This document shows positions 1 through 64,000 of a stretch of DNA of 64,000 bases, one piece after another. The notes below the pieces were generated by a model that saw only the letters and a program-made list of their open reading frames with translations, was not told the origin of the DNA and did no database searches. This DNA is from Oculina patagonica (taxonomy: Eukaryota): the NCBI RefSeq assembly GCF_052425735.1, contig NC_135760.1, positions 21,142,001 to 21,206,000 on the forward strand, read 5' to 3'. The position numbers and the translations under genes are program-made. Position 1 is the first letter of the stretch; every line of letters starts with the position of its first letter.

Positions 1-224
1 CCTTTCATATTGTGTTGAGTGTGCGTAGTATTGCAAGACGCTAGTTAGATTGTCCAACCAGGATAACTGTAATTAAAGCTTTACTAATTTCTTCACACGA
101 ATCATAAAAGTATTAACCAATGAAGTTCTCTTTCCTGAAAAAACTGCTTTCTTCGATGCTGTTTGACAAGTTATTTTGACAAGTTGTTTTGTCTCGTGTT
201 GTCTCAGACTCACAGAAACTTGCA

Positions 225-1205
225 ATGGGAGGACCAGATCGGCTCTGCCCTAACTCGCTGTCAGTTCAATTTGTGACACAAGCCGTGTACGCGCTTGGAG
301 TTGCAAATTGCGTCTTCAACATTCCAGTGGCCGTGTTCACTGTGCTGGGAAACAGTTTGGTCATTTACGTCATATGGAGACACCATAGTCTACACAACAA
401 TCACAACTACCTTTTAGTGGCGGTAGCAGCGACTGACGTCATCACCGCGCTTGTCACGCAACCTCTTTCAATCACGGCCATCTTTCAAGAAGTTCAACAG
501 GACATCAACTGTGGTATAAAGGATGCCCAGGCAGCTTGTAACCTTCTCTCTAACATGACCTCACTCTTAACCTTGATGCTGTTGAGTTTTGAGCGAATTT
601 TGGGCGTGTGTTTTCCCTTTTTGCACGAAACATTTGTCACGCCACGCAAATTACTTGCATGTATTGTTGGTATTTGGGTAGCCTCTTTGTTGCTTGTCCT
701 GTCACCGTATTACCACCTTTTGGGGCCAGGGACGCGGATGCGCGTAGGAGCTATCTTTCAGCTGGTAGCTTTCTTATTAATCGTTATCATTGCCCTATTC
801 ATGTATCGGATAGCGAGACGGCACGAGAATCAGATTGCGGCTCAAGTCCAGGCTGGCAGGGGACAACAACCACTCCAGCTTACAGATAGAAGATCGTTCA
901 AGACCACCATCTATGTTCTCGGTGCACTGATCGTGTGTCAAATCCCACTTTTTATCATCAGGGTTTTGAACAGAGTAAACGTGATAGACGAACATGCATT
1001 TGCATTAGCTTTGTGGCCCGTCACAACTTTAATGCACCTGAAAGCCGGCCTCAACTTTTGCATTTACGGCTGGAGAAATTCTCCCATACGTGAAAAGATT
1101 ATGCAGCTTATAAACATGGGACAAAATAGCGTCGAACCAGCTCAACTTCCCCCTGCTACACCTTACAATAACTTTAGACTCACTGCTTCGGCAACTGCTG
1201 AGTGA
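225..1205 (+). CDS. Class A (rhodopsin-like) orphan GPCR, paralogue 1; single coding exon
   Basis: Seven hydrophobic segments. Motifs: GNSLV (TM1), AVAATD (TM2 D2.50), SFERI (DRY-like), CQIP (CWxP-like), NFCIY (NPxxY-like). First ATG at 225, after a likely acceptor gtctcag| at 207; the ORF track start at 189 is a TTG. Confidence 0.9.
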   Translation: MGGPDRLCPNSLSVQFVTQAVYALGVANCVFNIPVAVFTVLGNSLVIYVIWRHHSLHNNHNYLLVAVAATDVITALVTQPLSITAIFQEVQQDINCGIKDAQAACNLLSNMTSLLTLMLLSFERILGVCFPFLHETFVTPRKLLACIVGIWVASLLLVLSPYYHLLGPGTRMRVGAIFQLVAFLLIVIIALFMYRIARRHENQIAAQVQAGRGQQPLQLTDRRSFKTTIYVLGALIVCQIPLFIIRVLNRVNVIDEHAFALALWPVTTLMHLKAGLNFCIYGWRNSPIREKIMQLINMGQNSVEPAQLPPATPYNNFRLTASATAE

Positions 1206-4853: not shown

Positions 4854-5398
4854 AATTCCCACCGTAAAATTTTATTTATGGTTCGGAACAAAAATCAAAG
4901 AAAACGTGCGACCTCAAGCATTCTGATCGAGTTCAATACTCACAACCAAAGTCGAAAAGAGGCATCTTCACCGCGATCTTCCACGTGCAACACGGTGCGC
5001 ACTTTTTGGACAAACCTTTTTGTGCACGGCACGTGCACTGTCCAAAACTCGACATCTCATTGGTTGGTTGGCTTACCTGAGGAAATTGAACAACATTCCA
5101 AATCACCAAGGGTTTCACTTATTCCCAGTCACTCAACCAGATAATTATCTCAGTAAATTTCCCCGAAGTAAAATCTGTTACATGTGAATAACTTACATTC
5201 TCTAGAGAAACCTTGTTATATTTTTGTTGGTAAAATGGCTCCATAACCACGGCTTTTATTGTCTGTCACTGGCAAAATTGTATCTTTTCCACACTCCCAG
5301 GAAAAACAATCATGTATTACTTTCCCTGAAGAGTGAAAATGCCTTCTTCATCAGAGCATTTGTTTGTTTGTTTCATTTCAGACTCAAAACAATCTGCC

Positions 5399-6388
5399 AT
5401 GGCAGTAACACACCGACTCTGCCCCAGCTCGTTGTCAATTCAGTCCGTGACACCAGCCATCTACGCGCTCGGAGTTGCATGTTGCGCCTTCAATATTCCG
5501 GTGGTCGTGTTTTCTGTGCTGGGAAACAGCTTGGTCATTTACGTGATATGGAGACACCATAGTCTACACAACAATCACAACTACCTTCTAGTGGCGATAG
5601 CAGCGACTGACGTTATCACTGGACTTGTCACGCAACCACTCAGCGTCACGGCCATCTTTCAAGAAGTTCAACAGGACATCAACTGTGGTATAAAGGACGC
5701 CCAGGCAGCTTGTAACCTTCTATGTAACATGACCTCACTCTTAACCTTGATGCTGTTGAGTTCTGAGCGAATTCTGAGCGTGTGTTTCCCCTTCTGGCAT
5801 GACACACTTGTCACGCCACGCAGACTTCTTGTACTCGTGGTTGGCATCTGGTTGTCCTCGCTGCTGCTTGTTTTGACACCATATTATCACGTTTTGAAGC
5901 CCCAGACCCGCATGCGTGTAGGAATGATGTTTCAGTCGGCAGCTTTCATCATCATCGTTATCATTTCCCTGTTCATGTATCGGATAGCGAGACGGCACGA
6001 GAATCAAATTGCGGCTCAAGTCCAGGTCGCCAATCAGGTCGAAGGACAGCAATCACTCCAGCTCACAGAAAGAAAATCGTTCAAAGCAACAGTCTTTGTT
6101 CTCGGTGCACTGATCTTGTGTCAAATCCCACTTTTTATCACCGGGTTTTTGTATAGAATAAAGGTGTTAGACGAACACGCTTTTGCATTAGCTTTGTGGC
6201 CCGTTACAGCTTTAATGCACCTGAACTCCGTCCTGAACTTTTGTATCTACAGCTGGAGAAATTCTGGCATTCGCGTTAAGATCATGCAGCTTATAAACAT
6301 GGGACAAAATAATAACGAACCAGCTCAGCCTCCTCCGACTCCGACGACTGGAAACTACGGAGTCCCGACAGCTACGACTAATTGCTGA
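5399..6388 (+). CDS. Class A orphan GPCR, paralogue 2; single coding exon
   Basis: Clear paralogue of 225-1205 (GNSLV, AIAATD, SSERI, CQIP, HLNSVLNFCIY). ATG at 5399 after acceptor tttcag| at 5381. Confidence 0.9.
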   Translation: MAVTHRLCPSSLSIQSVTPAIYALGVACCAFNIPVVVFSVLGNSLVIYVIWRHHSLHNNHNYLLVAIAATDVITGLVTQPLSVTAIFQEVQQDINCGIKDAQAACNLLCNMTSLLTLMLLSSERILSVCFPFWHDTLVTPRRLLVLVVGIWLSSLLLVLTPYYHVLKPQTRMRVGMMFQSAAFIIIVIISLFMYRIARRHENQIAAQVQVANQVEGQQSLQLTERKSFKATVFVLGALILCQIPLFITGFLYRIKVLDEHAFALALWPVTALMHLNSVLNFCIYSWRNSGIRVKIMQLINMGQNNNEPAQPPPTPTTGNYGVPTATTNC

Positions 6389-29236: not shown

Positions 29237-29283
29237 TGCCGAGACCCGGGATTGTTCAGAACTCATGCGAGTTCTCCGGATTT

Positions 29284-29334
<51 letters not shown>

Positions 29335-46900: not shown

Positions 46901-48708
46901 TTTTAGGCATGATAGAAACCATTTTCTTTGTTTTCATAAATTATGGCTTTGACACGAGTTGGTGTTAATTTAAGTGGCTAGAAAAGCTGTGAAAACACAA
47001 GCCATAGACGAGAGTTTTAACAGCTTTTTGGCGTATCAAAACCTTTCAAGAGTGTCTCGGCAGAGTCTGTGGAAAACATGAAATATTTAATAAAGGCTTC
47101 TATATCCTTTACCACGAGCATTTCAAATAACACTCTTTTCTCTAATAAGCTATGGTTAGTGATTTTAACCCACTTGTAGTGCGTTTACTATCGTTTCTAT
47201 TTTATAATTTCAAAGAAATAGCTAACGGTTTTACTGTTTCCGTGGTTTTGTGGCAAACAGAGTGGAACTTTTAAGATTGGTCTTGCTTCAACAGCTGTTT
47301 TGAACTCTCCAAAACGTTCAAGAGTGTTTAAACAAGGGAAAAAAGCTTTCCATTTCGTTCATGAAGAAAAAAAGGCGAAATTAAATTTTACGTTTCAGTT
47401 AAGTCATGATGAATGGATTTAAACCAATAACAATGCGCGTTTTTTCTTCTTAATTAATAAAATTATATTTTTAAATCTTCTTAATTAATTACAAATCGGT
47501 ACTCCATGTTTCCATAGAGCTATGGAAACCGTGACTGGAACTTTTTGGATAGCTAGTCAGGCTATGGAATGACATGTTTCCTCAGGTGCTGTTTCGAGCT
47601 CTTCCTAGCCTTCACGACTGTTTACCAACTCTGTGGAAAGTTTTCTATTTTGTTTAAGAAATTAGCGCCAAAAATACAAAATTTTTATGTTTCTATAGAG
47701 TTATTGCGAATAGTTTTTCAACAACAACAATGCATTTTTATTAAATGTTTAGAAGAATGTAGGGCAACCGGGAGTGCATGGGGTGCCCGCTCGGAGCATT
47801 ACTTGCGCGCTGCTTTTCAATTTATGTGCTCGGTCGCTGTACAAACCACCTCTCTAATAGAGCTTCTTTTAAACTCTTGTAAACCAGAGAGCGCGCGCGC
47901 GAACGCACTTTGACGGTCCACTTTGTTCGAATTCTAGAAAGTCCCGGGGGGGGGGGGGACCCCCATTAATTTTGGGGGATTTTTAAGGAAAAAAATTTAT
48001 GGTTTTTTTGAAAAAAACCCCCCCCCCCCCCCTAGAAAGTGGATATCATGTAGCTAGGAATTATATATTTACTTGAGATCGAAATGATCAGATTGTAAAT
48101 TTGATGCGGAAGAAACTCGAATAGCCCCTATTAGGTGAATACGAAGTGTAACACATAGACCAACTTCCGGCCTCAATGTTGAAAGAAAATCTTCTGAAAA
48201 ATGGAGACCGAGTCCATGAACAAACAAGGAGAAAAATCAAAAGATTTTTTTTATCGCGCTGCTATAAGATAACAAAATATTTCGCATTTAGCTTTGTTTG
48301 TTTGGGTTTCGACTTTTTCAGTTCGTGGCATGCAGAAAAATTATACCCAAACATTATAATTCTGGTGTGTACGTGTTCCGGCAAGATCACGACTAAACCG
48401 CATGCTGAGCTGGAAAATAACTGGTATCCCACGATATCTTGAACGCAGAAACGCGAGCAAGAAAAGCGAATTAACTTACTAGATTCATTCCTCATTATAA
48501 TTAACGTGAATAGAAAGTAAGCTTAGGTGGGGATTTCTCCGGCTTGAAAACCAGGCCTACTTGAAATGTATACTTTTTAGAAATATTTTTACGTATCATC
48601 TGGCAATGCCAGTTATGCTAGCGCTAAATCTATTTCCTTACCACAAAATCCACTGGCCTGCGAAAACAGGGCAAGAATCACCAAAAGTGCCAACAGTTGG
48701 CAGTTCAT
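43918..48708 (-). CDS. Secreted transcobalamin/haptocorrin/intrinsic-factor-family cobalamin-binding protein, ~420 aa. Exons 48708-48642, 46729-46074, 45482-45302, 44715-44696, 44256-43918
   Basis: Signal peptide MNCQLLALLVILALFSQASG. Alpha-barrel motifs GRVALYILGALATC, FQYSLAVLALC, GDTLAMHVLALKC, TFGQNEVTAALASQAL, SFINLLSTIYVIPAL. Beta domain YGRSIESICG...YWMIYIDGKSAPVGIDDL (DUF4430-like). GT-AG phases are consistent (1263 nt). Confidence 0.88.
44300..44412 (-). mobile_element. tRNA-derived SINE (second family), internally deleted
   Basis: Minus strand gcagggatggcgcagtggtgagtgcgctcgcc...ccgggttcgattcc (A and B boxes)...tctccggttttcctccct. Confidence 0.8.
44850..45097. mobile_element. MITE (9-bp TSD GTTGATATA) containing a nested near-perfect 175-bp palindrome (44906-45080)
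   Basis: ttgcctgcgt...acgcaggcta termini; ttacagcaaggcgcccaaaagtgtgacc...ggtcacacttttgggcgccttgctgtaa. Confidence 0.85.
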
Positions 48709-49597
48709 GGTGACGTGTCGTCGTTCCAAATGATAAAATAAAAGCTTTTTCTGCAGATTCGAGTCCAAGTGACCTGTACAACAGGAAATCACATGAACGA
48801 AAGAAAGGTCGGGGTACAGGCTATCACACGATATCACGTTACTGTGAGTCCCAGTCCTTATCAATACGACCCGAAACACGAACGAGGCAGGATTAAGGTG
48901 TTTTGCTAGCTCTGGAGAAGAGATTTATTACACTCCCCGTCTTTAACATTTAATCACAGCTACAACAATAAAACAATTTAATACGCAAAGCTAGAAGGCT
49001 AGTAATACGGAAATGACAAAAGAAAATTATTTGTTTCCACGCCGTTGTCACGCAACATTACTCTCAACGCGTCACGCAGCGTTGCAGAATGTTTTTACGC
49101 ACTGGAAATTGTTTGGCCAATATTTCGGCTTTATTACAACTGAGGAAGGTCTTTGTAATAAAACCAAAGTATTGGCCAAACAATTTCCATTTTTTGTAAT
49201 TCTTGAAATAATTATGTTTTTGATTATAATATTGTTACTTTAGCGCTATATAAATGTATAAATTATTATAATTATAAAATAACATTGACTAAAGAAGAGG
49301 AGAAAGGACCAATGCTGCCCATGTATCAGTTTTGCAAGGCTTGTGCATGTTCATGTTATCTCAATGTCCTACAAGTTTTTCTAGCTCATTTGTGAACTTG
49401 AGCAAATGAAACAAGTTTTTCAGTTTAAGAGTTTGTTCTAGACCCTTGTAGAAGTATTCCGGGCATTCTCCGCGGAGCTTCTGAAGACCGATCAATGTTT
49501 GCCCATTTAATTCCGAAATATTTTTCTTTTTGCACACCTTTGCCAATCCAATTTCTTTGAGCCATTTCTTGACATCTTGATTTGTCCAGCCAGATAC
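47160..49597 (+). repeat. Segmental duplication block A; direct repeat of 61025-64000, which probably continues beyond the window
   Basis: Colinear, high identity from tgatttt(a/c)acccacttgtagtgcg through the B12-gene exon 1 and promoter to the ARM-TIR-SAM 3' end. Confidence 0.95.
47943..48031. mobile_element. polyG/polyC-ended MITE present in block A only; interior is probably poor-quality sequence
   Basis: CTAGAAAGT duplicated at 47934-47942 and 48032-48040. The empty site ttctagaaagtggatatc is at ~62301. Confidence 0.75.
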
Positions 49598-51373
49598 ATC
49601 TGTCGCTGGGAATGGGGGTGGGGGTGGGTGTGAGGCTGTAACAACACTGGCCTCACTTGGTCGAATGACTGCCTCTGGTGGCCCATCCGTCGCGTCGCCA
49701 TCTTTTCCTCTTCCTCCTAACTCCTTGATAAGTTTTCCCACAGCAGAATCAACAACATGTTTACTTTGAAAGCCAATCCATAGTTTTGTCCCCACCAGCA
49801 TTCCTAACCAGCCGTCTGCCTGGTAATTGCGTTGCATCATCAAAGGAATGATGTCTTTTCTCAGTTGATAGGCGTATTCGGCTTCTGATCGACAGTTGGG
49901 GCTTTCTTTGTAGCGTTGTGACAGGCAGACCAGCACAACAGCGGCGTCTTCGACGGCCTTGGCCATCGCTTCTAGTGTGGACCCACCCATCTGCTCCAGA
50001 TCCATCCACACTCGATACCCTTTGGCCTGAAGCTTGTTCTTGACTTCCACTAAGATTTCTTGGGAATCCCATTGGTAGCTGATCATCACGTGATTTCCAG
50101 TGGCCTCTTTAGTCTTTTCGGCATTGTTTCTTGCTGTCTTTCCTTCAATCTCCCACAATGCACCTGACGCTGCCTTTTGCACCTCCGGGTTTCCACTGTG
50201 GTGTAACTCGCGTAATGTATCCAACGCCCCTTCCTCTTGCCTAATGACATCTTTATTGAAGTCGTCAAACGCCAACATCCACAGAGCCCTTGCAGCACTT
50301 GCGCGTTCCTCGTCATCGTTTGAAGTCTTCAGAATCGACGTTAGCACACGTACCGCTCCATTTTTGCCCAGAATCTTCTTGTTGTCGTCGTTGATGGCAA
50401 GGTGGCTAAGTCCTTCTGCAAGCTCTGTCGCGGAATACCCGAGGTATCGTCGGTCTTCAGACTGACATGCTCCGTATAACTTTGTTACGATAGAGACAAG
50501 CAGGTTTTCGTCGGCTGAAATTAAATGATTGGTTTCTTCATTTACCAGGTACCCAAGGCAGAGCAAGGCTTCAGTAGCAATGTTTTCATTGTTAACCTTG
50601 GCAAAATAGAGTAATGTCTCCTCGCTGTTAGCAAACAACTCACGGTCTCTCAGCCGTCGCGAAATGTTGTACAAAATTCCGAGACATGAATCGATAAGTT
50701 CGACTGACTCGGATTCATTTTGCCAGTTTCCATTTTCCCGAAGACGTATTATATTTTCAAGACACATAGAAACTACTCCCGCTTTGGCACTCGCCGAGCA
50801 AAAGCCGTCGGTGATGTCTGAAATGTTATGAATCGTTCCGAGCACTGTTTGGAGACAATCAAAACAAGTGAAATCCCACGATTTCTCATCTGCGCTTTCA
50901 TGGTCTGATTCATCACCCATCTCGTAGTAATCGTTGAAACAATTCTGAGCGAACTTTTGCAACACCGCTGCGCCGTCGATTTCTACCACAAAGTCCACGA
51001 TTTCGGTGTTTTCTCTAGCTTCGCTATAGGATGTAGTGAACATGTTAGCAATAGCATTGCCCACCAGCTCCGAATTATTCGCGAAAGTGTTTCGTAACAC
51101 TTGCATATTCTTAAACATTGTTTGCAGATCGTCGGCTTGTTCCGGGTAGTTTATTTTGTATCTTTCAAGCGTATCTATGTGTAACACAGCCCATTCAGTG
51201 TTATCTTGAATCGAATTCGTCTCATTTCTCTCGTGCTCCCTAGGCGGCCTGTCGTGACTCAACCACTGTTCTTGAAGCACCTTTGGTTGAGCGGCATTTT
51301 GCATTGGAGATTCTGGGGAGTTGGACTGAGTGACCGCCGCGTTACCTTGCGGCTGCACCGTTTGAAGCTCCAT
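49361..51373 (-). CDS. ARM-repeat / TIR / SAM domain protein, copy 1 (670 aa, intronless, starts MELQ)
   Basis: ARM repeats (EGLSHLAINDDNKKILGKNGAV, AARALWMLAF, PEVQKAASGALWEI); TIR_2-type HVMISYQW...VWMD...AVEDA..VLVCLSQRYKESPNCRSEAEYA...IIPL; SAM VSGWTNQDVKKWLKEIGL...LNGQTL. First ATG at 51373 aligns with the copy 2 ATG. Confidence 0.92.
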   Translation of the reverse strand: MELQTVQPQGNAAVTQSNSPESPMQNAAQPKVLQEQWLSHDRPPREHERNETNSIQDNTEWAVLHIDTLERYKINYPEQADDLQTMFKNMQVLRNTFANNSELVGNAIANMFTTSYSEARENTEIVDFVVEIDGAAVLQKFAQNCFNDYYEMGDESDHESADEKSWDFTCFDCLQTVLGTIHNISDITDGFCSASAKAGVVSMCLENIIRLRENGNWQNESESVELIDSCLGILYNISRRLRDRELFANSEETLLYFAKVNNENIATEALLCLGYLVNEETNHLISADENLLVSIVTKLYGACQSEDRRYLGYSATELAEGLSHLAINDDNKKILGKNGAVRVLTSILKTSNDDEERASAARALWMLAFDDFNKDVIRQEEGALDTLRELHHSGNPEVQKAASGALWEIEGKTARNNAEKTKEATGNHVMISYQWDSQEILVEVKNKLQAKGYRVWMDLEQMGGSTLEAMAKAVEDAAVVLVCLSQRYKESPNCRSEAEYAYQLRKDIIPLMMQRNYQADGWLGMLVGTKLWIGFQSKHVVDSAVGKLIKELGGRGKDGDATDGPPEAVIRPSEASVVTASHPPPPPFPATDVSGWTNQDVKKWLKEIGLAKVCKKKNISELNGQTLIGLQKLRGECPEYFYKGLEQTLKLKNLFHLLKFTNELEKLVGH

Positions 51374-51682
51374 ATTGATTGAACTTGCTAGATAACTGTG
51401 CGGCCGCACAAACGATACGATATTTCTTGAACGCTGTCGCAGTTGCTGTATGCGGAACTGAATTGGGTTGTTATCGAAGACACTACTCGCCTTGATTTCA
51501 GTCAGCAACAAATTTAGCAGAGATCGTCACGCGAACACAACGTCCCGGGTTTATACTTAAAATACGGTGTGTAGTTGAGAATGTAGTTTTTCCGTTAGCT
51601 ACATGTGGAAAACAAACAGAATATTTTCCTTTTCCAGGCGAAATCAGTCATTTAGCATGTAGATTTCTAGGCGGTGACCCAG

Positions 51683-51690
51683 TGACGTCA
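51683..51690. promoter_or_regulatory. CRE/ATF palindrome TGACGTCA upstream of copy 1, also present at 57718-57725 upstream of copy 2
   Basis: Exact palindrome retained in both promoters; function not shown. Confidence 0.4.
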
Positions 51691-52559
51691 ACGTAAATTT
51701 GAGGTTGATTTCCACTGTCGCGTAAATATTTACGTATGTGAAACGTGCGTTTCCATGTGTTTAACTCAACAATAAATCATCGCTTAGACCATAGAGCAAA
51801 ATAGAATTGCTGCTCAGTTAGAAATAACCAGTACGAGATATAAATGAAAAAGTCACGTTATATTTTATGAGTTTTAAAAGTAGCACGAAAACAACTCTGA
51901 TATCTCTACCTTCAAAGCCTTCAAAAGCGATCAAAGTGCCTTTGACCTTTAATACTTACGGCAGAGTATCGTATATCGCATGCACACTTTAAATAACACA
52001 CTTCTTGTTGAACAGCAACAAAAGGAAACATGAACGCTATATCGCTACTGGGTATGTCTAAAAGCCTTAGGCTTTCTTGTTAGCCAAAAGAGTGGTTAAC
52101 CATTAACCACCCGGTTTCAATCTACTCAGTAGTTTCTTGTTACTTTTTACGCGACAGTGGAAATTTGCCAACGTACGTCTTTAAACGCGTACGTATAACG
52201 CACGTAATTTTAATCCCTCAAGTGGTTAGTAATTTAAAACATTTCCTCCGTTCCATTCCCCATTCCCCTTCCCCTATTGAAGTAAAAGGGGTGATAAAAG
52301 ATGACCAGTTTTAAGCCAATCAACATGCGTGACCTTCAATGCCCTACCGACAAAAAAAAAACGACGACAAAAAAAATAGCCGAAGGTAGATTATGAACCG
52401 GGGGGGGGGCACCAGACCCCCACCCGTTTCTTTTTCACGTGTGTTGAACGTACGTAAATGGCTGCCATCCTGAACTTTGGCGCCAAAAAGCAAGGAGATC
52501 GCGGATAATTTGATGTGCCAGCCGCCAAAGTAAATGGCACCCGTTGCATAAAGAGAGTT

Positions 52560-53370: not shown

Positions 53371-54146
53371 ACATTTTACGCGTGCAATTACGTGTGTTGA
53401 TCTGACTTAACGTTGTCAATTTCGAATGCCATGTTTATTTCTAGGTATTTACGTACGTTACACGCACGTATACGCACTGAGCGATCGTGAGGGTTTTCGC
53501 ATTTTTTTCGCGGTTGTCTGCGGTTACGCAGCGATTTACTGATCATACTTTTGGATTTTATCACTTGACACCACTTGCCATGTCGACGCCATTTTGTTTT
53601 AATCGCCGTCGACATATTCAGATGTAGAAGCACTTTTTATAGATGAAGTTCGAAAATTTTCAGCAATATGACCCCGCGGCCAGGGTTCGAACCCGGACCG
53701 CTCGATCCGGAGTCCGGTGCACTTACCATTAAATATTGCCGCGAACTATGTACTGAGACAATGTGTATCTACGTTGTAATTCACTTAAAAGTCCATTTTC
53801 AAATATGTTTTTTGCATGTCACAGTTTACTTGAAATAGGGCAAGGCACTTTACTCTTAATGTGCCTCTCTCCACGGCCACCCAGGTGTAGAAATAGGCAC
53901 CGGGGCGCGGCGACATAATGCTGGGGAGTATCCTGCGATGGATTAACATCCCATTCAGGGTGGAGTAGAAATATTCCTAGCCGGGATAAGCTCCGGCAAG
54001 TATGGGCCGCATGGCTCGAGGCTTCCCTATTACGGGGTGTCACAACCTTATCAACCAGAAACCAATATTGGAAACCAAAAACCTTTTTTCGTCCCCGCCT
54101 TTCCGCCTCCCCCTCCTTCTTTACAATCTAGGTAGTTGGCTAAGTT

Positions 54147-54428
54147 GTGGGAGGCGCGGTGGCCTAATGGTTAGTGCGCCTGACTCTGGATCGAGCGGTC
54201 CGGATTCGAGCCCTGGCCGGGGTCACTGTGTTGTGTTCTTGGGCAAGACACTTTACTCTCAGAGTGCCTCTCTCCACCCAGATGTATAAATTGGTACCGG
54301 CGACATAATGCTGGGAAGGGTACCCTGCGATTGACTAGCATCCCATTCAGGGGGAGTAGAAATATTCCTAGCCGCTTAATGCTACGGAAACCGGAATAAG
54401 CTCCGGCAGTATGGGCCCCATGGCTCAA
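54147..54428 (+). mobile_element. Full-length tRNA-derived SINE. A 5'-truncated copy is at ~53835-54020; fragments at ~53670-53730, ~12145-12250 and ~33860-34010
   Basis: A box ggtggcctaatggttag, B box ggattcgagccc, conserved body tgtgttgtgttcttgggcaagacacttt...ctagcatcccattcagggggagtagaaat. Confidence 0.9.
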
Positions 54429-57675: not shown

Positions 57676-57706
57676 TAGCATGTCACTGAACAGACTGATG
57701 CAACAG

Positions 57707-60557
57707 TAAATTTACATTGACGTCACTGGGTCGCCGCCTAGAAATCTACATGCTAAATGATTGATTTCGCCTGGAAACGGAAAATATTCGGATTGTTTTC
57801 CACCTGTAGCCGATGGAAAAACTACAATCTCAACTACACACCGTCTTTTAAACACGAGGGCGCGCTATAAAAGGGAGCTTTCCAGGGAAGCCCAGGGCTC
57901 ATTTGTAAACCCAGGATGCTGTGTTCGCGTAACGTTCTCCGCTAAATTAGTTGCCGACTGAAATCAAGGCGAGTAAATGTCTTCGATAACAACCCAACCC
58001 AGTTCCGCATCATAGCAACTGCCACCGCGTTCTAGAAACTTCATATCGCTCGTGTAGCTAAACAGTAATCTAGCCAGTTCAATCAAAATGGGTACTGGTG
58101 GATCAAAAAAGCTTCAAATTGTGCAGCCGCAAGCTGACGAGGCGGCGAATTCCAGTTCTCCAGAATCTCCAATGCAAAATCCTGTTCAACCAAATGTGCT
58201 TCAAGAACAGTGGCTGAGTCACGACAGGCCGCCTAGGGAGCACGAGAGAAATGAGACGAATTCGATTCAAGATAACACTGAATGGGATGTGTTGCACAGA
58301 GGCACGCTTGGAAGATACAAGATAAACTACCCGGAACAAGCCGGAGATCTGCAAACAATGTTTGAGAATATGCAAGTGTTACGAAACACTTTTGCGAATA
58401 ATTCACGAGGACAAGATCGGTATACGGAGCTTGTGAACGAGACTATTGATAACATGTTCAATACATCCTGTAGCGACGCTAGAGAATACACCGCAATCGT
58501 GGACTTTGTGGTGGAAATCGAAGGCGCGGCGGTCTTGCAAAAGGTCGCTCAGAATTGTTTCAACGATTACTACGAGATGGGTGATGAATCAGACGATGAA
58601 AGCACAGATGACACAGATGACGAATGGTGTGATCAATTCACTTGTATTAATTGTCTCCTAACCGTGCTAGGAACTCTTCATAACCTTTCAGACAAAACCG
58701 ATGCCTTTTGCTCGGCGAGTGCCAAAGCAGGAGTGGTTCCTTTGTGTCTTGAAAATATAATACGTCTTCGGGAAAATGGAAACTGGCAAAATGAATTCCG
58801 GTCAGTCCAACTTATCGATTCATGTCTCGGAATTTTGTACAACATTTCGCGACGGCTGAGAGACCGTGAGTTGTTTGCTAACAGCGAGGAGACATTACTC
58901 TATTTTGCCAAGGTTAACAATGAAAACATTGCTACTGAAGCCTTGTTATGCCTAGGGTACCTAGTAAATGAAGAAACCAATCATTTAATTTCAGCCGACC
59001 TTGAGCTGCTTGTGTGTATCGTAACAAAGTTATACGGAGCATGTCAGTCTGAAGACCGACGATACCTCGGATATTCCGCGACAGAGCTTGCAGAAGGACT
59101 TAGCCACCTTGCCATCAACGACGACAACAAAAAGATTCTGGGCAAAAATGGAGCGGTACATGTGCTAACGTCGATTCTGAAGACTTCAAATGATGACGAG
59201 GAACGCGCAAGTGCTGCAAGGGCTCTGTGGATGTTAGCTTTCGACGACTCCAACAAAGATGTCATAAGGAAAGAAGCAGAGGCGTTGGATATATTACGCG
59301 AGTTACACCACAGCGGAAACCCGGAGGTGCAAAAGGCAGCGGCAGGTGCATTGTGGGAGATTGAAGGAAAGACAGCAAGAATCAGTACCGAGAAGACGAA
59401 AGGGGCTACTAGGAATCACGTGATGATCAGCTACCAATGGCATTCCCAGGAAATCTTAGTAAAAGTCAAGAACAAGCTTCAGGCCAATGGATATCGAGTG
59501 TGGATGGATCTGGAGCAGATGGGTGGGTCCACACTAGACGCGATGGCCAAGGCTGTCGAAGACGCCGCTGTTGTGCTTGTCTGCGTGTCACAACGCTACA
59601 AAGAAAGTCCTAATTGTCAGTCAGAAGCCGTATATGCGCATGAACGGAGAAAAGACATCGTTCCTTTGATGATGCAACGCAATTACAAGGCGGACGGCTG
59701 GCTGGGAATAATTGTGGGGGGAAAATACTGGATTGGCTTTGAGAGTAAACATGTTGTTGATTCTGCTGTTAGAAAACTTATCAAGGAGTTAGGAGGAAGA
59801 GGAAAAGATGGCGACGCGACGGATGGGCCACCAGAGGCAGTCATACGACCAAGTGAAACCAGTGTTCTAGGAGCCCCACCCCCAGCGACGGATGTCTCTG
59901 GCTGGACAAATCAAGATGTGAAAAAGTGGCTCACAGAAATTGGATTGGGGCACGTGTGCAAAAAGAAAAACATTTCTGATTTAAATGGGCAAACATTGAT
60001 CGATCTTCAGAAGCTCCGCGGAGAATGCCCGGAATACTTCTACAAGGGTCTAGAACAAACTCTGAACCTGAATAACATGTTTCACTTGCTCAAGTTCACA
60101 AATGAGCTAGAAAAACTTCTAGGACATTGAGATAAAATGAACATGCACCAGTTTTGCAAAACTGCTACATGGCCAGCATTGCTTCTTATTCTTCTTATTA
60201 AGTCAATGTTATTTTAGTAACAATATTATAATCACATACTTGTAAATAACATAATTATTTCAAGAATTACAAAATCACTGGCAATTGTTTTGCCAATATT
60301 TTGGTTTTATTAAAAAGAACTGCCTCAGTTGTATTACAACCGAAATATCACTATCACTCTGCAACGCTGCGTGACACGTTGAGAGTAGTGTTGCGTGACA
60401 CATGGAGAGTAGTGTTACATCTTAACGGCGTAAAAAACAAAGCATTTTCTTTAGTTATGTCCGTATTTCTAGCCTTGCATATTAAATTGTTTTATTGTTG
60501 TAGCTGTGATAATAGACGCGAAGTGTAATAAATCTCTTCTCGGAAACTAGCAAAACA
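57707..60557. repeat. Inverted duplication of ~48898-51700 (whole ARM-TIR-SAM gene with promoter and 3' flank)
   Basis: Reverse-complement match from aaatttac.ttgacgtcactggg to gtgtaataaatctcttct..ctagcaaaaca. Confidence 0.93.
58088..60130 (+). CDS. ARM-repeat / TIR / SAM domain protein, copy 2 (680 aa, intronless), with N-myristoylation motif MGTGGSKK
   Basis: Open 680-aa ORF with the same ARM, TIR (SPNCQSEAVYA) and SAM motifs as copy 1. Confidence 0.95.
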   Translation: MGTGGSKKLQIVQPQADEAANSSSPESPMQNPVQPNVLQEQWLSHDRPPREHERNETNSIQDNTEWDVLHRGTLGRYKINYPEQAGDLQTMFENMQVLRNTFANNSRGQDRYTELVNETIDNMFNTSCSDAREYTAIVDFVVEIEGAAVLQKVAQNCFNDYYEMGDESDDESTDDTDDEWCDQFTCINCLLTVLGTLHNLSDKTDAFCSASAKAGVVPLCLENIIRLRENGNWQNEFRSVQLIDSCLGILYNISRRLRDRELFANSEETLLYFAKVNNENIATEALLCLGYLVNEETNHLISADLELLVCIVTKLYGACQSEDRRYLGYSATELAEGLSHLAINDDNKKILGKNGAVHVLTSILKTSNDDEERASAARALWMLAFDDSNKDVIRKEAEALDILRELHHSGNPEVQKAAAGALWEIEGKTARISTEKTKGATRNHVMISYQWHSQEILVKVKNKLQANGYRVWMDLEQMGGSTLDAMAKAVEDAAVVLVCVSQRYKESPNCQSEAVYAHERRKDIVPLMMQRNYKADGWLGIIVGGKYWIGFESKHVVDSAVRKLIKELGGRGKDGDATDGPPEAVIRPSETSVLGAPPPATDVSGWTNQDVKKWLTEIGLGHVCKKKNISDLNGQTLIDLQKLRGECPEYFYKGLEQTLNLNNMFHLLKFTNELEKLLGH

Positions 60558-61601
60558 ATAAAGGCGCAGCTCAGAGAGGAATGGGGACGAGGGCTCGCAC
60601 TATACTGTACTTTACGAAATTTTCCAGCGTTCGGCTACGAACAGTCGCCATTCATTCCTTAGATTTAAAGGGGCCGTGTCACAGCTGAGTTAAGTTTATG
60701 TGTTATTTCCGCTAGGTAATATATTCGACTTGAACTTGTGATTTTTTTGGGACGCAACGGCGTCACACAACAGGAAATTTTGCAGCAAACAATGTCATGA
60801 CGTACATGGCGTGAATGGCGTGCTGCGAGGTCAAGGCGACCGATACATTCCACATATATAGGGCCCGGATATAGGGCAATTTTTGAAACTAGCTCTGAAA
60901 AAACGGAAAAGAATTGCTATTCATAAGGCAAACGTATAAATTAGTAACAAAAACTGGGACAGGTCTGATAACTTTTACATCAGCCTTACTTTATACTATA
61001 AATGTTCGAATTAGCTACAGTAAATGATTTTCACCCACTTGTAGTGCGTTTACTATCGTTTCTATTTTATAATTTCAAAGAACATTCTAACGGTTTTACT
61101 GTTTCCGTGGTTTTGTGGCAAACTGAGTGGAACTTTTAAGATGGGTCTTGCTTCAACAGCTGTTTTGAACTCTCCAAAACTTTTGAGAGTGTTTAAACAA
61201 AGGGATAAAAGCTTTCCATTTCGTTCATGAAGGCAAAAGTCGAAATTAATTTTTACGTTTCAGTTAAGTCGTGATGAATGAATTTGAATCAATGACAATG
61301 CGTTTATCTTCTTAATTAATAAAAATATCTTTTATCTTCTTAATTAAGAAATACAAATCGGTACTCCATGTTTCCATAGAGCTATGGAAACCGTGACTGG
61401 AACTTTTTGGATAGCTAGTCAGGCTATGGAATGACATGTTTCCTCAGGTGCTGTTTCGAGCTCTTCCTAGCCTTCACGACTGTTTACCAACTCTGTGGAA
61501 AGTTTTCTATTTTGTTTAAGAAATTAGCGCCAAAAATACAAAATTTTTATGTTTCTATAGAGTTATTGCGAATAGTTTTTCAACAACAACAATGCATTTT
61601 T

Positions 61602-62106
61602 AAGCGATGACGTGTAACTGATGACGTCATCGCTTTAATGCAGGCACCCGATCGACCGGATCCGTTTAGCTCAATCGAACAGAAATCAAGTTTAACTTAA
61701 TAACAAGAAATCGCTGCGTGGAACACAAAAGCAAAATACTCCCGTGCAGTAAGAATGGGACCCTAAAATGTATAAACGAAAGAGACTAAATTTTATATGA
61801 TGGCATCTATTAGATTTGGTAGACATAGATTTCTAATTCTTAGAAGATACAGGGCCACTGTAAGCAAGAGACCGTTTGACCTTTCTCGCAGCTTAAAAGC
61901 TAGCTCCCGCGTATCGTATGTCGTTTATCGCAAGTCACGCTATAAGACCTATAATATAACGTAATCTTTGTTGAGACAACATAGGGAAATCAAAAAATAT
62001 ATATATATAACTGTAGTTGTACAATTGAGCAAATCTACGAAGAAAATGTATTTTTAACCCCTTGTGAAACGTCATCGCTTCAGCATGTATTGCATGCCGT
62101 TTATTA
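61602..62106 (+). mobile_element. Helentron/HINE (DINE-1-like) non-autonomous element present in block B only
   Basis: 5' subTIR aagcgatgacgt with adjacent inverted copy, 3' subTIR acgtcatcgctt (62069-62080), terminal hairpin gcatg-tattg-catgc, T-rich insertion site. Absent at 47740. Confidence 0.65.
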
Positions 62107-62406
62107 TTAAATGTAGAAGAATGTCGGGCAACCGGGAGTGCATGGTGTGCCCGCTCGGAGCATTACTTGCGCGCTGCTTTTCAATTTATGTGCTCGGTCG
62201 CTTTACAAACCACCTCTCTCTAATAATATAGCTTCTTTTAAACTCTAGTAGACCAGAGAGCGCGCGCGCGAACGCACTTTGACGGTCCACTTTGTTCGAA
62301 TTCTAGAAAGTGGATATCATGTAGCTAGGATTTATATATTTACTTGAGATCGAAATGATCAGATTGTAAATTTGATGCGAAAGAAACTCGAATAGCCGCT
62401 ATTATG

Positions 62407-62532
62407 ACTGACTCGTCCCCAGTCGTCTTTTATGCGAAAATTGCAAGACGCGAAGGATGAAATCCCATGATTCCCTCCGTGTTCAGCAGTCGACTCAAGA
62501 CGGACTCAAAAGACGACTGGGGACGAGTCAGG
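62407..62532. mobile_element. Short MITE with 8-bp TSD (hAT-like), block B only
   Basis: ctgactcgtccccagtcgtctttt / aaaagacgactggggacgagtcag. CTATTATG at 62399-62406 and 62533-62540. Confidence 0.85.
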
Positions 62533-63057
62533 CTATTATGATACGAAGTGTAACACATAGACCAACTTCCGGCCTCAATGTTGAAAGAAAATCTTCTGAA
62601 AAATGGAGACCGAGTCCATGAACAAACAGAAAAATCAAAAGATTTTTTCATCGCGCTGCTATAAGATAACAAAATATTTCGCATTTAGCTTTGTTTGTTT
62701 GGGTTTCGACTTTTTCAGTTCGTGGCATGCAGAAAAGTTATACCCAAACATTATTATTCTGGTGTGTACGTGTTCCGGCAAAATCACGACTAAACCGCAT
62801 GCTGAGCTGGAAAATAACTGGTATCCCACGATATCTTGAACGCAGAAACGCGAGCAAGAAAAGCGAATTAACTTACTAGATCCATTCCTTATTATAATTA
62901 ACGTGAATAGAAAGTAAGCTTAGGTGGGGATTTCTCTCGAAATCCAGGCCTACTTGAAATGTATACTTTTCAGAAATATTCTTACGTATCATTTGGCAAT
63001 GCTAGTTATGCTAGCGCTAATGAATTCATTAAATCAGTTAAAAATCTATTTCCTTAC

Positions 63058-63124
63058 CACAAAATCCACTGGCCTGCGAAAACAGGGCAAGAATCACCAA
63101 AATTGCCAACAGTTGGCAGTTCAT
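63058..63124 (-). pseudogene. Duplicated exon 1 (signal peptide) of the cobalamin-binding gene; orphan or alternative first exon
   Basis: MNCQLLAILVILALFSQASGFC|gtaagg is intact with its promoter, but the duplicated intron stops at ~61025 and has no exon 2 of its own. Confidence 0.8.
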
Positions 63125-63763
63125 GGTGACGTGTCGTCGTTTCAAATGATAAAATAAAAGCTTTTTCTGCAGATTCGAGTCCAAGTGACCTGAACAACGG
63201 GAAATCACATGAACGAAAGAAAGGTCGGGGTTACAGGGTATCACACGATATCACGTTACTGTGAGTCCCAGTCCTTATCAATACGACCCGAAACGCGAAC
63301 GAGGCAGGATTAAGGTGTTTTGCTAGCTCTGGAGAAGAGATTTATTACACTCCCCGTCTTTAACATTTAATCACAGCTACAACAATAAAACAATTTAATA
63401 CGCAAGGCTAGAAGGCTAGTAATACGGAAATGACAAAAGAGAATTATTTGTTTCCACGCCGTTGTCACGCAACATTACTCTCAACGCGTCACGCAGCGTT
63501 GCAGAATGTTTTTACGAATTACAAAAACACTGGAAATTGTTTGGCCAATATTTCGGCTTTATTACAACTAAGGAAGCTCTTTGTAATAAAACCAAAGTAT
63601 TGGCCAAACAATTTCCATTTTTTGTAATTCTTGAAATAATTATGTTATTTACAAGCATGTGATTATAATATTGTTACTAAAATAACATTGACTAAAGAAG
63701 AGGAGAAAGGACCAATGCTGCCCATGTATCAGTTTTGCAAGGCTTGTGCATGTTCATGTTATC

Positions 63764-64000
63764 TCAATGTCCTACAAGTTTTTCTAGCTCATTTGTGAAC
63801 TTGAGCAAATGAAACAAGTTTTTCAGTTTAAGAGTTTTTTCTAGACCCTTGTAGAAGTATTCCGGGCATTCTCCGCGGAGCTTCTGAAGATCGATCAATG
63901 TTTGCCCATTTAATTCCGAAATATTTTTCTTTTTGCACACCTTTGCCAATCCAATTTCTTTGAGCCATTTCTTGACATCTTGATTTGTCCAGCCAGATAC
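63764..64000 (-). CDS. ARM-TIR-SAM copy 3, C-terminal SAM part only (runs off the window)
   Basis: VSGWTNQDVKKWLKEIGLAKVC...LKFTNELEKLVGH*, nearly identical to copy 1. Confidence 0.88.
   Translation of the reverse strand, partial: VSGWTNQDVKKWLKEIGLAKVCKKKNISELNGQTLIDLQKLRGECPEYFYKGLEKTLKLKNLFHLLKFTNELEKLVGH

What the first reader, a model, noticed from the sequence alone, without database searches (positions are those of the whole stretch)
58088..58117. Myristoylation toggle between ARM-TIR-SAM paralogues
Seen: copy 2 starts ATG GGT ACT GGT GGA TCA AAA AAG CTT CAA (MGTGGSKKLQ). Copy 1 (51373) starts ATG GAG CTT CAA (MELQ) in the same upstream context (gttcaatcaa.atg). A clean in-frame 18-nt indel covers exactly this motif. 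Established: MGxxxS followed by Lys is the N-myristoyltransferase consensus; the TIR adaptor TRAM uses myristoylation for membrane targeting. Inference: one membrane-anchored and one cytosolic form, meaning sub-functionalisation by localisation.
Basis: partly seen in the sequence, partly recalled or inferred. Interest (0 to 1): 0.72.

Follow-up and report, generated by a model that had tools for sequence, protein, structure and literature searches.

The report
Lipid-anchor signal lost in one paralogue
In a cluster of coral immune-type genes (ARM-TIR-SAM), one copy has lost by an 18-base deletion the start signal for a fatty-acid membrane anchor that relatives from corals to oysters and amphioxus keep, yet it has stayed intact, so it is probably a soluble version of a normally membrane-tethered protein.

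Summary
Copy 2 (58088-60130, +) starts MGTGGSKKLQ. Copy 1 (49361-51373, minus strand) starts MELQ. A clean 18-nt gap lies in otherwise about 90% identical DNA, including about 330 nt upstream.

The change is a one-way loss, not a toggle. Five of the seven clustered intronless paralogues, a distant paralogue (MGCGGSHH) and 101 of 115 scorable coral homologues start MG-x-G-x-S-K/R. G2, G4 and S6 are the only conserved residues in a disordered 59-residue leader. Relatives in amphioxus, acorn worms, an annelid, abalone and oyster have the same kind of start.

Copy 3, just past the window end, shares the deletion and is split by a 415-nt MITE. Copies 1 and 3 diverged with dN/dS 0.18 (P = 4e-6), so the anchor-less form stayed under purifying selection. 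At least three other coral lineages lost the motif independently.

No MG-encoding start lies within 6.5 kb upstream. Contigs from three studies carry the deletion and run colinear into the 5' flank. Lipidation, localisation and copy-1 expression remain untested; one raw polyA run gave no reads.

An earlier follow-up in this scan (s1-291626) had already called the neighbouring cluster genes lipid-anchorable. The myristoylation signal on this catalogued "ARM-TIR" family was not found in the searched literature.

The parts
58088..58117 (+). Start of copy 2: MGTGGSKKLQ, a predicted N-myristoylation signal (Gly2, Thr3, Ser6, Lys7, Lys8).
   Evidence: The motif is conserved in the family.
58088..60130 (+). 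Copy 2, an intronless 680-codon ORF. It has a disordered leader (1-59), an ARM-repeat domain (~60-430), a TIR domain (444-568) and a SAM-like five-helix bundle (608-678).
49361..51373 (-). Copy 1, an intronless 670-codon ORF with the same architecture. It starts MELQ, which is not myristoylatable.
   Evidence: It is 86% identical to copy 2.
51362..51373 (-). Start of copy 1, ATG GAG CTT CAA. The junction of the 18-nt deletion lies between 51370 and 51369. The Glu codon is a hybrid of the G of GGT and the AG of AAG.
51374..51707 (-). 5' flank of copy 1 (5'UTR/promoter), homologous to the flank of copy 2. It has no in-frame ATG, and contigs are colinear up to 51683.
   Evidence: (I6).
57701..58087 (+). 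5' flank of copy 2, the inverted-repeat partner of 51374-51707. An in-frame stop lies 10 codons before the ATG.
63620..64000 (-). 3' end of copy 3. The gene runs on beyond the window to G000:C3:21208392. Its start is also MELQTV, so it shares the deletion, and it is split by a 415-nt MITE.
   Evidence: (I2, D1).
47141..49574 (.). Direct-repeat partner of 61006-63977 (91-99% identical). This is the segmental duplication that produced copy 1 and copy 3 together with their 3' flank.
   Evidence: D1-D4, D7, D8.

Best explanation
The window holds part of a tandem cluster of seven intronless ARM-TIR-SAM genes (a domain-permuted relative of SARM1, of the class catalogued as 'ARM-TIR') in a stony coral, probably Oculina patagonica.

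The ancestral protein begins M-G-x-G-x-S-K/R on a ~59-residue disordered leader. After removal of the first Met, N-myristoyltransferase would attach myristate to Gly2. The ARM-TIR-SAM body would then be tethered to the cytosolic face of membranes. Lys7-Lys8 would help, and if the SAM domain oligomerises as it does in SARM1, several anchors per particle would add up.

On the branch leading to copies 1 and 3, an 18-nt out-of-phase deletion replaced G2-K8 by one Glu. The new Met-Glu start cannot be myristoylated; by established rules it is a NatB-type acetylated N-terminus. This anchor-less form was kept under purifying selection. It is therefore most likely a soluble paralogue, or one recruited only through hetero-oligomers, of a normally membrane-tethered protein.

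Shown: the sequence facts, the polarity of the change, conservation of the motif, selection after the loss, and the presence of NMT. Inferred: actual lipidation, membrane binding, SAM-mediated oligomerisation, different localisation, and any NADase activity.
For: - Indel and ORFs.
- Architecture.
- Seven clustered copies plus one distant paralogue.
- N-termini are MG[TA]GGS[KT]K in five local copies and MGCGGSHH in the distant paralogue; only copy 1 reads MELQ.
- Copy 3 shares the MELQTV start.
- The tree, built without the N-terminal columns, gives (copy2,(copy1,copy3)) with 97/100 and 100/99 support, nested among MG copies.
- 90 of 120 coral homologues start MG.
- After DNA checks 101 of 115 do, with at least 4 independent losses.
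- G2, G4 and S6 are at least 90% conserved in an otherwise variable leader. The leader has pLDDT below 30.
- In the wider family, 53 of 108 full-length representatives start MG and 43 fit MGxxx[ST]. Named members include Pocillopora, Branchiostoma, Ptychodera, Owenia, Haliotis and Magallana.
- NMT exons lie on C7.
- Copy 1 vs copy 3: dN 0.0083, dS 0.045, dN/dS 0.18, 13 non-synonymous against 19 synonymous changes, binomial P = 3.8e-6.
- No upstream MG start and no in-frame upstream ATG.
- Contigs from three studies carry the deletion and are colinear with the 5' flank.
- The consensus MGXXXS/T with an absolute Gly2 requirement, and a G2A mutant relocating a protein to the cytosol: PMC4736023.
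- TRAM uses a myristoylation site plus a polybasic region: PMC3369926.
Against: - No lipidation or localisation data exist for any family member.
- The only raw-read polyA RNA run (3.5 M reads) gave no read on copy 1. The three runs whose contigs cover the gene are only guessed to be RNA, and they were picked because they hold this gene.
- Contigs cannot separate copy 1 from the 96-99% identical copy 3.
- One myristate plus two Lys is a weak anchor, so the localisation difference may be small.
- Indels are common in the leader, so one hitting the first 8 of 59 codons could be an accident tolerated through redundancy.
- The sister copy 3 has since been disrupted by a MITE, as expected in a birth-and-death family.
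- The dN/dS of 0.18 sums both branches and rests on 32 changes.
Confidence: 0.6

Rival explanations
1. Copy 1 is a redundant paralogue on its way out. The deletion was a neutral or mildly harmful accident in a fast birth-and-death gene family, and there is no division of labour by location.
For: - Sister copy 3 carries a 415-nt MITE in its coding sequence.
- No reads in the raw polyA run.
- Indels are frequent in the leader.
- Tandem TIR-gene amplification with turnover is known in corals (PMC10236652).
- Two other homologues have the MG start out of frame with the main ORF.
Against: - Copy 1 has an intact 670-codon ORF.
- dN/dS is 0.18 between the two deletion-bearing copies (P = 3.8e-6), lower than among the MG copies at 0.3-0.5.
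- A separate coral lineage that lost ATG-GGT keeps ~690-codon ORFs across ten representatives that differ by up to 10% in protein sequence.
- Contigs of probable RNA origin cover the gene body.
Confidence: 0.22
2. The conserved MG-x-G-x-S start is not used for myristoylation. It serves something else, such as a translation-start context or an N-terminal stability signal, so its loss does not change localisation.
For: No experimental lipidation data exist. Sequence motifs for NMT give false positives (PMC4736023 discusses the limits of predictors).
Against: - Conservation is at the protein level and at exactly the NMT-determinant positions (G2, small residue 3, S/T6, basic 7-8), with variable codons.
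- Many relatives have Cys3, the classic myristate-plus-palmitate dual-acylation start: 12 of 108 representatives, and the paralogue on C5.
- The motif sits at the tip of a disordered leader.
- NMT is present.
Confidence: 0.08
3. Copy 1 regains an MG start through an upstream spliced exon or an alternative start, so both forms are anchored.
For: The reading frame stays open for 51 codons upstream of the copy 1 ATG.
Against: - Those 51 codons hold no ATG.
- No PS00008-like MG start exists in any frame of the gene strand within 6.5 kb upstream.
- The ~330-nt 5' flank is homologous to that of the MG copies, where the ATG-GGT follows directly.
- Contigs run colinear from the coding sequence to 51683, and no joint is listed upstream of the ATG.
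- All family members are single-exon.
Confidence: 0.03

Closest known systems
TRAM (TICAM2), the myristoylated TIR sorting adaptor of vertebrate TLR4 signalling
   Same: It is a TIR-domain protein whose membrane targeting depends on an N-terminal myristoylation site helped by basic residues (PMC3369926, citing Rowe 2006). From memory, its start is also of the M-G-x-G-x-S-K type.
   Different: TRAM is a short TIR-only adaptor with no ARM or SAM domain. No homology beyond the TIR fold was tested or found here. TRAM is vertebrate-specific, whereas this family is found in invertebrates.
SARM1 / C. elegans TIR-1 (ARM-SAM-SAM-TIR NAD+ hydrolase)
   Same: These are the only solved structures found by sequence (8p2l, 8p2m, E 6e-4), with both the SAM and the TIR stretches aligned. 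Full-length hSARM1 is the only natural multi-domain fold match. The invariant E513 aligns with the Glu of the WVHKE motif, which I recall as the catalytic Glu (E642 in human SARM1; an E642A structure is). In both proteins a leader in front of the ARM domain carries the localisation signal.
   Different: The domain order is permuted (ARM-TIR-SAM) and there is one SAM instead of two. SARM1's leader is, from memory, a mitochondrial targeting sequence and not a lipidation signal. Sequence similarity is weak. NADase activity, octamer formation and NMN/NAD sensing are untested.
'ARM-TIR' / ecTIR-DC proteins of invertebrate immunome surveys
   Same: They share an armadillo fold plus a TIR domain, are expanded in marine invertebrates and are absent from vertebrates (PMC9334734; PMC6321704). 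'SARM-like' and tandemly amplified TIR families are reported in corals (PMC10236652).
   Different: None of those papers mentions myristoylation, and no paper in the searched library combines myristoylation, TIR domain and cnidaria. The paralogue-specific loss is not described.
Isoform- or paralogue-specific N-acylation that sets localisation (sperm hexokinase HK1S; Src-family kinases)
   Same: A short N-terminal MG(C) tag decides between membrane and cytosol, and a G2A mutation relocates HK1S to the cytosol (PMC4736023). The coral deletion, and the G2R start in homologue P0038, are natural equivalents of G2A.
   Different: The protein families are unrelated. Here the difference arose by a deletion between tandem gene duplicates and not by alternative exons.

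Membership tests
N-myristoyltransferase substrates (co-translational N-myristoylation) | Initiator Met followed by Gly2 (absolute requirement) | tested here: met
   Copy 2 starts MG. An in-frame stop lies 10 codons upstream. M1 is invariant and G2 at least 90% conserved in the family. Copy 1 and copy 3 start ME, so they do not meet this feature.
N-myristoyltransferase substrates (co-translational N-myristoylation) | Permissive residue 3, Ser/Thr at 6, no Pro at 7, basic residues at 7-8 favoured (MGXXXS/T; PROSITE PS00008-type pattern) | tested here: met
   Copy 2 reads G-T-G-G-S-K-K. 46 of 108 wider-family representatives fit the PS00008-like pattern at their start. The consensus is as quoted in PMC4736023. 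The dedicated NMT predictor could not be run.
N-myristoyltransferase substrates (co-translational N-myristoylation) | The organism has an NMT enzyme | tested here: met
   PF02799 (NMT_C) matches over the cut-off in two exons at G000:C7:13968913-13970662.
N-myristoyltransferase substrates (co-translational N-myristoylation) | Myristate actually attached to Gly2, with membrane association depending on it | not testable with these tools
   This needs metabolic labelling, mass spectrometry or G2A fusion proteins.
SARM1 family | Domain order ARM - SAM - SAM - TIR | tested here: not met
   The order here is ARM (~60-430), TIR (444-568), then one SAM-like bundle (608-678).
SARM1 family | Catalytic glutamate in the TIR domain | tested here: met
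   E513 is invariant in 33 homologues and aligns with the Glu of WVHKE in 8p2l/8p2m. That this Glu is the catalytic one comes from memory, supported by the E642A entry 7cm7.
SARM1 family | NAD+ hydrolase activity and SAM-driven octamer | not testable with these tools
Invertebrate 'ARM-TIR' class | Armadillo-fold repeats plus a TIR domain in one protein | tested here: met
   Pfam Arm (E 8e-9 and 3.5e-9) and TIR_2 (E 8e-22 and 7e-23) in both copies. The best fold matches are armadillo-repeat proteins. The class is defined in PMC9334734.
SAM domain (C-terminal module) | Match to a SAM profile above the curated cut-off | tested here: inconclusive
   SAM_1 scores 21.0 and 21.8 bits against a cut-off of 23, and SAM_2 19.1 and 19.2 bits against 20.5. 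The SAM stretch of SARM1/TIR-1 aligns. A five-helix bundle is predicted at 608-678 with pLDDT 62-84.
TRAM/TICAM2 | Short TIR-only adaptor orthologous to vertebrate TICAM2 | tested here: not met
   The architecture is ARM-TIR-SAM. The PDB sequence search returned only SARM1/TIR-1. Only the lipid-tag principle is shared.

The most novel reading that the evidence does not exclude
An N-terminal myristoylation (often myristoylation plus palmitoylation, MGC) tag is an ancestral hallmark of the whole invertebrate ARM-TIR-SAM family, shared by cnidarians and bilaterians. On this reading these proteins are membrane-tethered SARM1-like NAD-cleaving immune sensors. Expanding clusters would repeatedly spin off soluble paralogues by destroying the tag: by deletion here, and by G2R, start-codon loss and leader replacement in other corals. 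Those soluble copies would then act in a different compartment or tune the anchored oligomers.
Probability: 0.35. Interest if true: 0.7.

Novelty: new variant of a known kind. Interest (0 to 1): 0.5.

Why it matters
ARM-TIR proteins are among the most expanded and least understood immune-type genes of corals, molluscs and other marine invertebrates, and nothing is known about where they act. A conserved lipid-anchor signal gives the first concrete, testable clue: the cytosolic face of membranes, as for TRAM. Natural anchor-less paralogues are ready-made controls. If the TIR domain is an NADase like that of SARM1, anchoring would place NAD cleavage or nucleotide signalling at a membrane, for example the plasma, phagosomal or symbiosome membrane. 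That bears on coral-symbiont and coral-pathogen biology. On the other hand, the single indel is a small event, and losing a lipid tag among duplicated genes is a familiar route of divergence.

Tried and rejected
1. Upstream exon supplying MG. I scanned 6.5 kb upstream of copy 1 on the gene strand in three frames and found no PS00008-like MG start and no in-frame ATG in the open 51 codons. Rejected.

2. Assembly artefact. Contigs from three studies carry the deletion. Rejected.

3. Gain of the motif in copy 2. Rejected by the outgroups and the tree.

4. Raw-read RNA evidence. The only polyA raw-read run, X24 (3.5 M reads), laid 22 reads, all on repeats and none on the gene. The other three runs are contigs only guessed to be RNA, and they were selected for holding this gene. 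Expression of copy 1 therefore stays unproven, and read laying allows only one call.

5. Non-MG homologues taken at face value. Many are gene-caller artefacts.
   - P0032 has an in-frame MGSGGSKH 28 codons upstream of the called start.
   - Seven models are extended upstream and hold an internal MG motif.
   - 'MSYGGSKK' is really GTG AGT TAT GGT, a prokaryote-style GTG start call.
   - P0059 and P0103 have the MG start out of frame in long-read contigs. That may be an indel error, so they were left unscored.

6. Pfam SAM is below the cut-off. SAM is kept only as 'SAM-like'.

7. Whole-chain Foldseek gives low TM-scores to SARM1 because the domain order differs. It was not pursued domain by domain.

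8. Gene conversion at the 5' end. The first 150 nt of copy 2 are slightly closer to copies c7 and c5 (91% and 90%) than to copy 1 (86%). This is too weak to conclude anything and does not affect the polarity.

9. No complex prediction of SAM hetero-oligomers was run, because hetero-oligomerisation is only a hypothesis here.
Full report
**1. The observation**

At 58088-58117 (+) the window reads ATG GGT ACT GGT GGA TCA AAA AAG CTT CAA. This opens a 680-codon ORF, 58088-60130. The second gene is on the minus strand. Its ATG is at 51373-51371, it reads ATG GAG CTT CAA, and it opens a 670-codon ORF down to 49361.

Alignment A1 shows one 18-nt gap right after ATGG. The flanks are 90% identical, including about 200 nt upstream in that alignment. 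An inverted repeat extends the homology to 51707 and 57701 (I6). The gap is out of codon phase. The G of GGT and the AG of AAG form a new GAG, so residues GTGGSKK become a single E.

Contigs from three public runs of three studies span the start without a gap: X2 51272-51629 with 0 mismatches, X1 51291-51492, and X3 51306-51462. No 18-nt insertion is listed at that place.

**2. What the genes are**

Both proteins carry Pfam Arm and TIR_2 domains. The C-terminal 86 residues match SAM_1 and SAM_2 just below the cut-offs.

The only solved structures found by sequence are SARM1 and C. elegans TIR-1 (8p2l, 8p2m, E 6e-4). Both the SAM and the TIR stretches align, but in swapped order. The invariant E513 aligns with the Glu of the WVHKE motif.

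An AlphaFold model built on 33 homologues shows these parts:

| Residues | Feature |
|---|---|
| 1-59 | disordered, pLDDT below 30 |
| ~52-430 | helical repeat domain |
| 444-568 | TIR fold |
| 575-600 | disordered linker |
| 608-678 | five-helix bundle |

The best Foldseek matches are armadillo-repeat proteins and full-length human SARM1.

The genome's own proteins are named Oculina patagonica. The literature catalogues such proteins as 'ARM-TIR', 'SARM-like' or ecTIR-DC and reports tandem amplification of TIR genes in corals. None of those papers mentions myristoylation. No paper in the searched library combines myristoylation, TIR domain and cnidaria.

**3. Polarity of the change**

The genome has seven intronless paralogues within 21.19-21.27 Mb of contig C3, plus a 48%-identical one on C5. 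Their starts are:

| Copy | Start |
|---|---|
| copy 2 | MGTGGSKK |
| c4 | MGAGGSTK |
| c5 | MGTGGSKK |
| c6 | MGAGGSKK |
| c7 | MGTGGSKK |
| C5 paralogue | MGCGGSHH |
| copy 1 | MELQ |

Copy 3 begins just beyond the window end. Its 3' end is at 63620-64000. It also starts ATG GAG CTT CAA ACG, so it shares the deletion.

A maximum-likelihood tree built without the first 150 alignment columns gives (copy 2,(copy 1, copy 3)) with 97/100 and 100/99 support, nested among the MG copies. The change is therefore one loss on the copy 1 + 3 branch, before their duplication (dS 0.045) and after the split from copy 2 (dS about 0.16-0.19).

**4. Is the motif functional?**

Among 120 coral homologues, 90 start MG as called. 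Several of the rest are artefacts of gene calling. Seven models are extended upstream and hold an internal MG-x-G-x-S-K. P0032 has an in-frame MGSGGSKH 28 codons upstream of the called start. After these corrections, 101 of 115 scorable sequences have the motif.

In the 33-sequence alignment, M1 is invariant and G2, G4 and S6 are at least 90% conserved. The rest of the first ~70 residues is variable.

In an exhaustive search of 50%-identity representatives, 53 of 108 full-length relatives start MG, 43 fit MGxxx[ST] and 12 start MGC. Named examples are:

| Organism | Start |
|---|---|
| Pocillopora | MGAGSSRK |
| Branchiostoma | MGSAPTKP, MGCNVSKG |
| Ptychodera | MGTGASKS, MGCGASKS |
| Owenia | MGCGSSKS |
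| Haliotis | MGCGTSKT |
| Magallana gigas | MGSVTSKK |

The genome encodes NMT. The usual consensus is MGXXXS/T with an absolute need for Gly2, and a G2A mutation moves a myristoylated protein to the cytosol (PMC4736023). TRAM uses a myristoylation site plus a polybasic region (PMC3369926). I conclude that the motif is very probably a real, ancient lipidation signal. Lipidation itself has not been shown.

**5. Fate of the anchor-less form**

With the 415-nt MITE and one copy of its 8-nt target duplication removed, copy 3 is an open 671-codon frame.

Copy 1 against copy 3 gives dN 0.0083, dS 0.045 and dN/dS 0.18. That is 13 non-synonymous against 19 synonymous changes, where neutrality would give about 79% non-synonymous (binomial P = 3.8e-6). 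Other pairs in the cluster give 0.3-0.5. So the ME form was kept under purifying selection after it lost the tag.

Other corals show independent losses with intact ORFs:
- P0038 starts MRSGGSRH in frame, a natural G2R.
- A Tara-Pacific lineage of ten representatives, 90-99% identical in protein, has GTG AGT in place of ATG GGT.
- P0036 has a replaced leader.

On a family tree built without the N-terminal columns, the minimum number of losses is four.

**6.

- Upstream exon: no MG-type start exists in any frame of the gene strand within 6.5 kb upstream, and there is no ATG in the 51 open codons before the start. Contigs are colinear up to 51683, with no joint listed upstream of the ATG.
- Reads: they support the indel.
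- Localisation: not testable here.
- Expression: weakly supported. In runs X1 and X2 the whole gene body (49200-51800) is covered, while the unique flanks have little or no depth. That looks like transcript bounds. However, these runs are only guessed to be RNA and were chosen because they hold this gene. The single raw polyA run gave no reads on the gene.

**7. Mechanism and caveats**

The most likely reading is that MG copies are myristoylated on a flexible leader and tethered to membranes, and that copy 1 is soluble.

One myristate with two Lys is a weak anchor by the established two-signal rule (my own knowledge). Stable binding would need SAM-driven oligomerisation (inferred by analogy with SARM1) or a partner. 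The SAM regions of copies 1 and 2 are 88% identical, so mixed oligomers are conceivable but untested.

Indels are common in the leader. The hit on the motif could therefore be an accident tolerated through redundancy. The MITE in copy 3 shows that turnover is ongoing.

**8. Verdict**

Novelty is modest for the indel itself. It is higher for the family-wide lipid tag, which I did not find described in the searched literature. An earlier follow-up in this scan (s1-291626) had already called neighbouring cluster genes 'lipid-anchorable'.

Noticed in passing
L032:1005-1419 (minus strand) = G000:C3 about 21207707-21208121, roughly 1.7 kb beyond the window end: Copy 3 is split after codon 35 by a 415-nt MITE-like insert. 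Its terminal inverted repeats read CCCGGGGGGGGTACTC...GAGTACCCCCCCCCGGG and its 8-nt target duplication is GAACAGTG. Insert plus one duplication is 423 nt (3 x 141). With it removed the 671-codon frame is fully open, so the insertion is recent. An in-frame stop lies inside the insert.
   Followed up: partly
window 54150-54420: A tRNA-derived SINE-like repeat (ggtggcctaatggttagtgcg...ggattcgagccc head). It has extreme contig depth in three runs (up to 30,000) and many internal joints. Parts recur at 53950-54010 and 54340-54420.
   Followed up: no
proteins P0121-P0269: The ARM-TIR-SAM core (query residues ~190-677) defines a very large family: 581 clusters at E <= 1e-30. It spans cnidarians, amphioxus, hemichordates, annelids and molluscs. 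About half of the full-length representatives start MG, and 12 of 108 start MGC (a dual-acylation type). The N-terminal leaders are otherwise unrelated.
   Followed up: partly
L043 (P0038), L040 (P0058), L045 (P0036), L042 (P0059), L044 (P0103): Other corals show independent disruptions of the MG start while the rest of the ORF stays intact. These are G2R (MRSGGSRH), ATG GGT changed to GTG AGT, a replaced leader, and two cases with the MG start out of frame (-86 and -107 nt) in long-read contigs that may be assembly indels.
   Followed up: partly
window 47141-49574 and 61006-63977: A 91-99% identical direct repeat carries the 3' flank and the 3' end of copies 1 and 3. This is the recent segmental duplication. 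Copies 1 and 2 are head-to-head, with 6.7 kb between their start codons.
   Followed up: partly
G000:C4:53.64-53.71 Mb, C4:61.10-61.28 Mb and C2:30.37-30.39 Mb: Further clusters of multi-exon relatives. Their TIR exons are 50-71% identical to copy 2, with ARM exons nearby. This suggests additional tandem expansions of related ARM-TIR genes that have introns.
   Followed up: no
window 29275-29332 (minus strand): Rfam tRNA match covering only model positions 8-63 of 71 (41 bits).
   Followed up: no
window 204-1153 and 5378-6336: 85% identical direct repeats about 5.2 kb apart, which may be another tandem duplication at the left end of the window. Content not examined.
   Followed up: no
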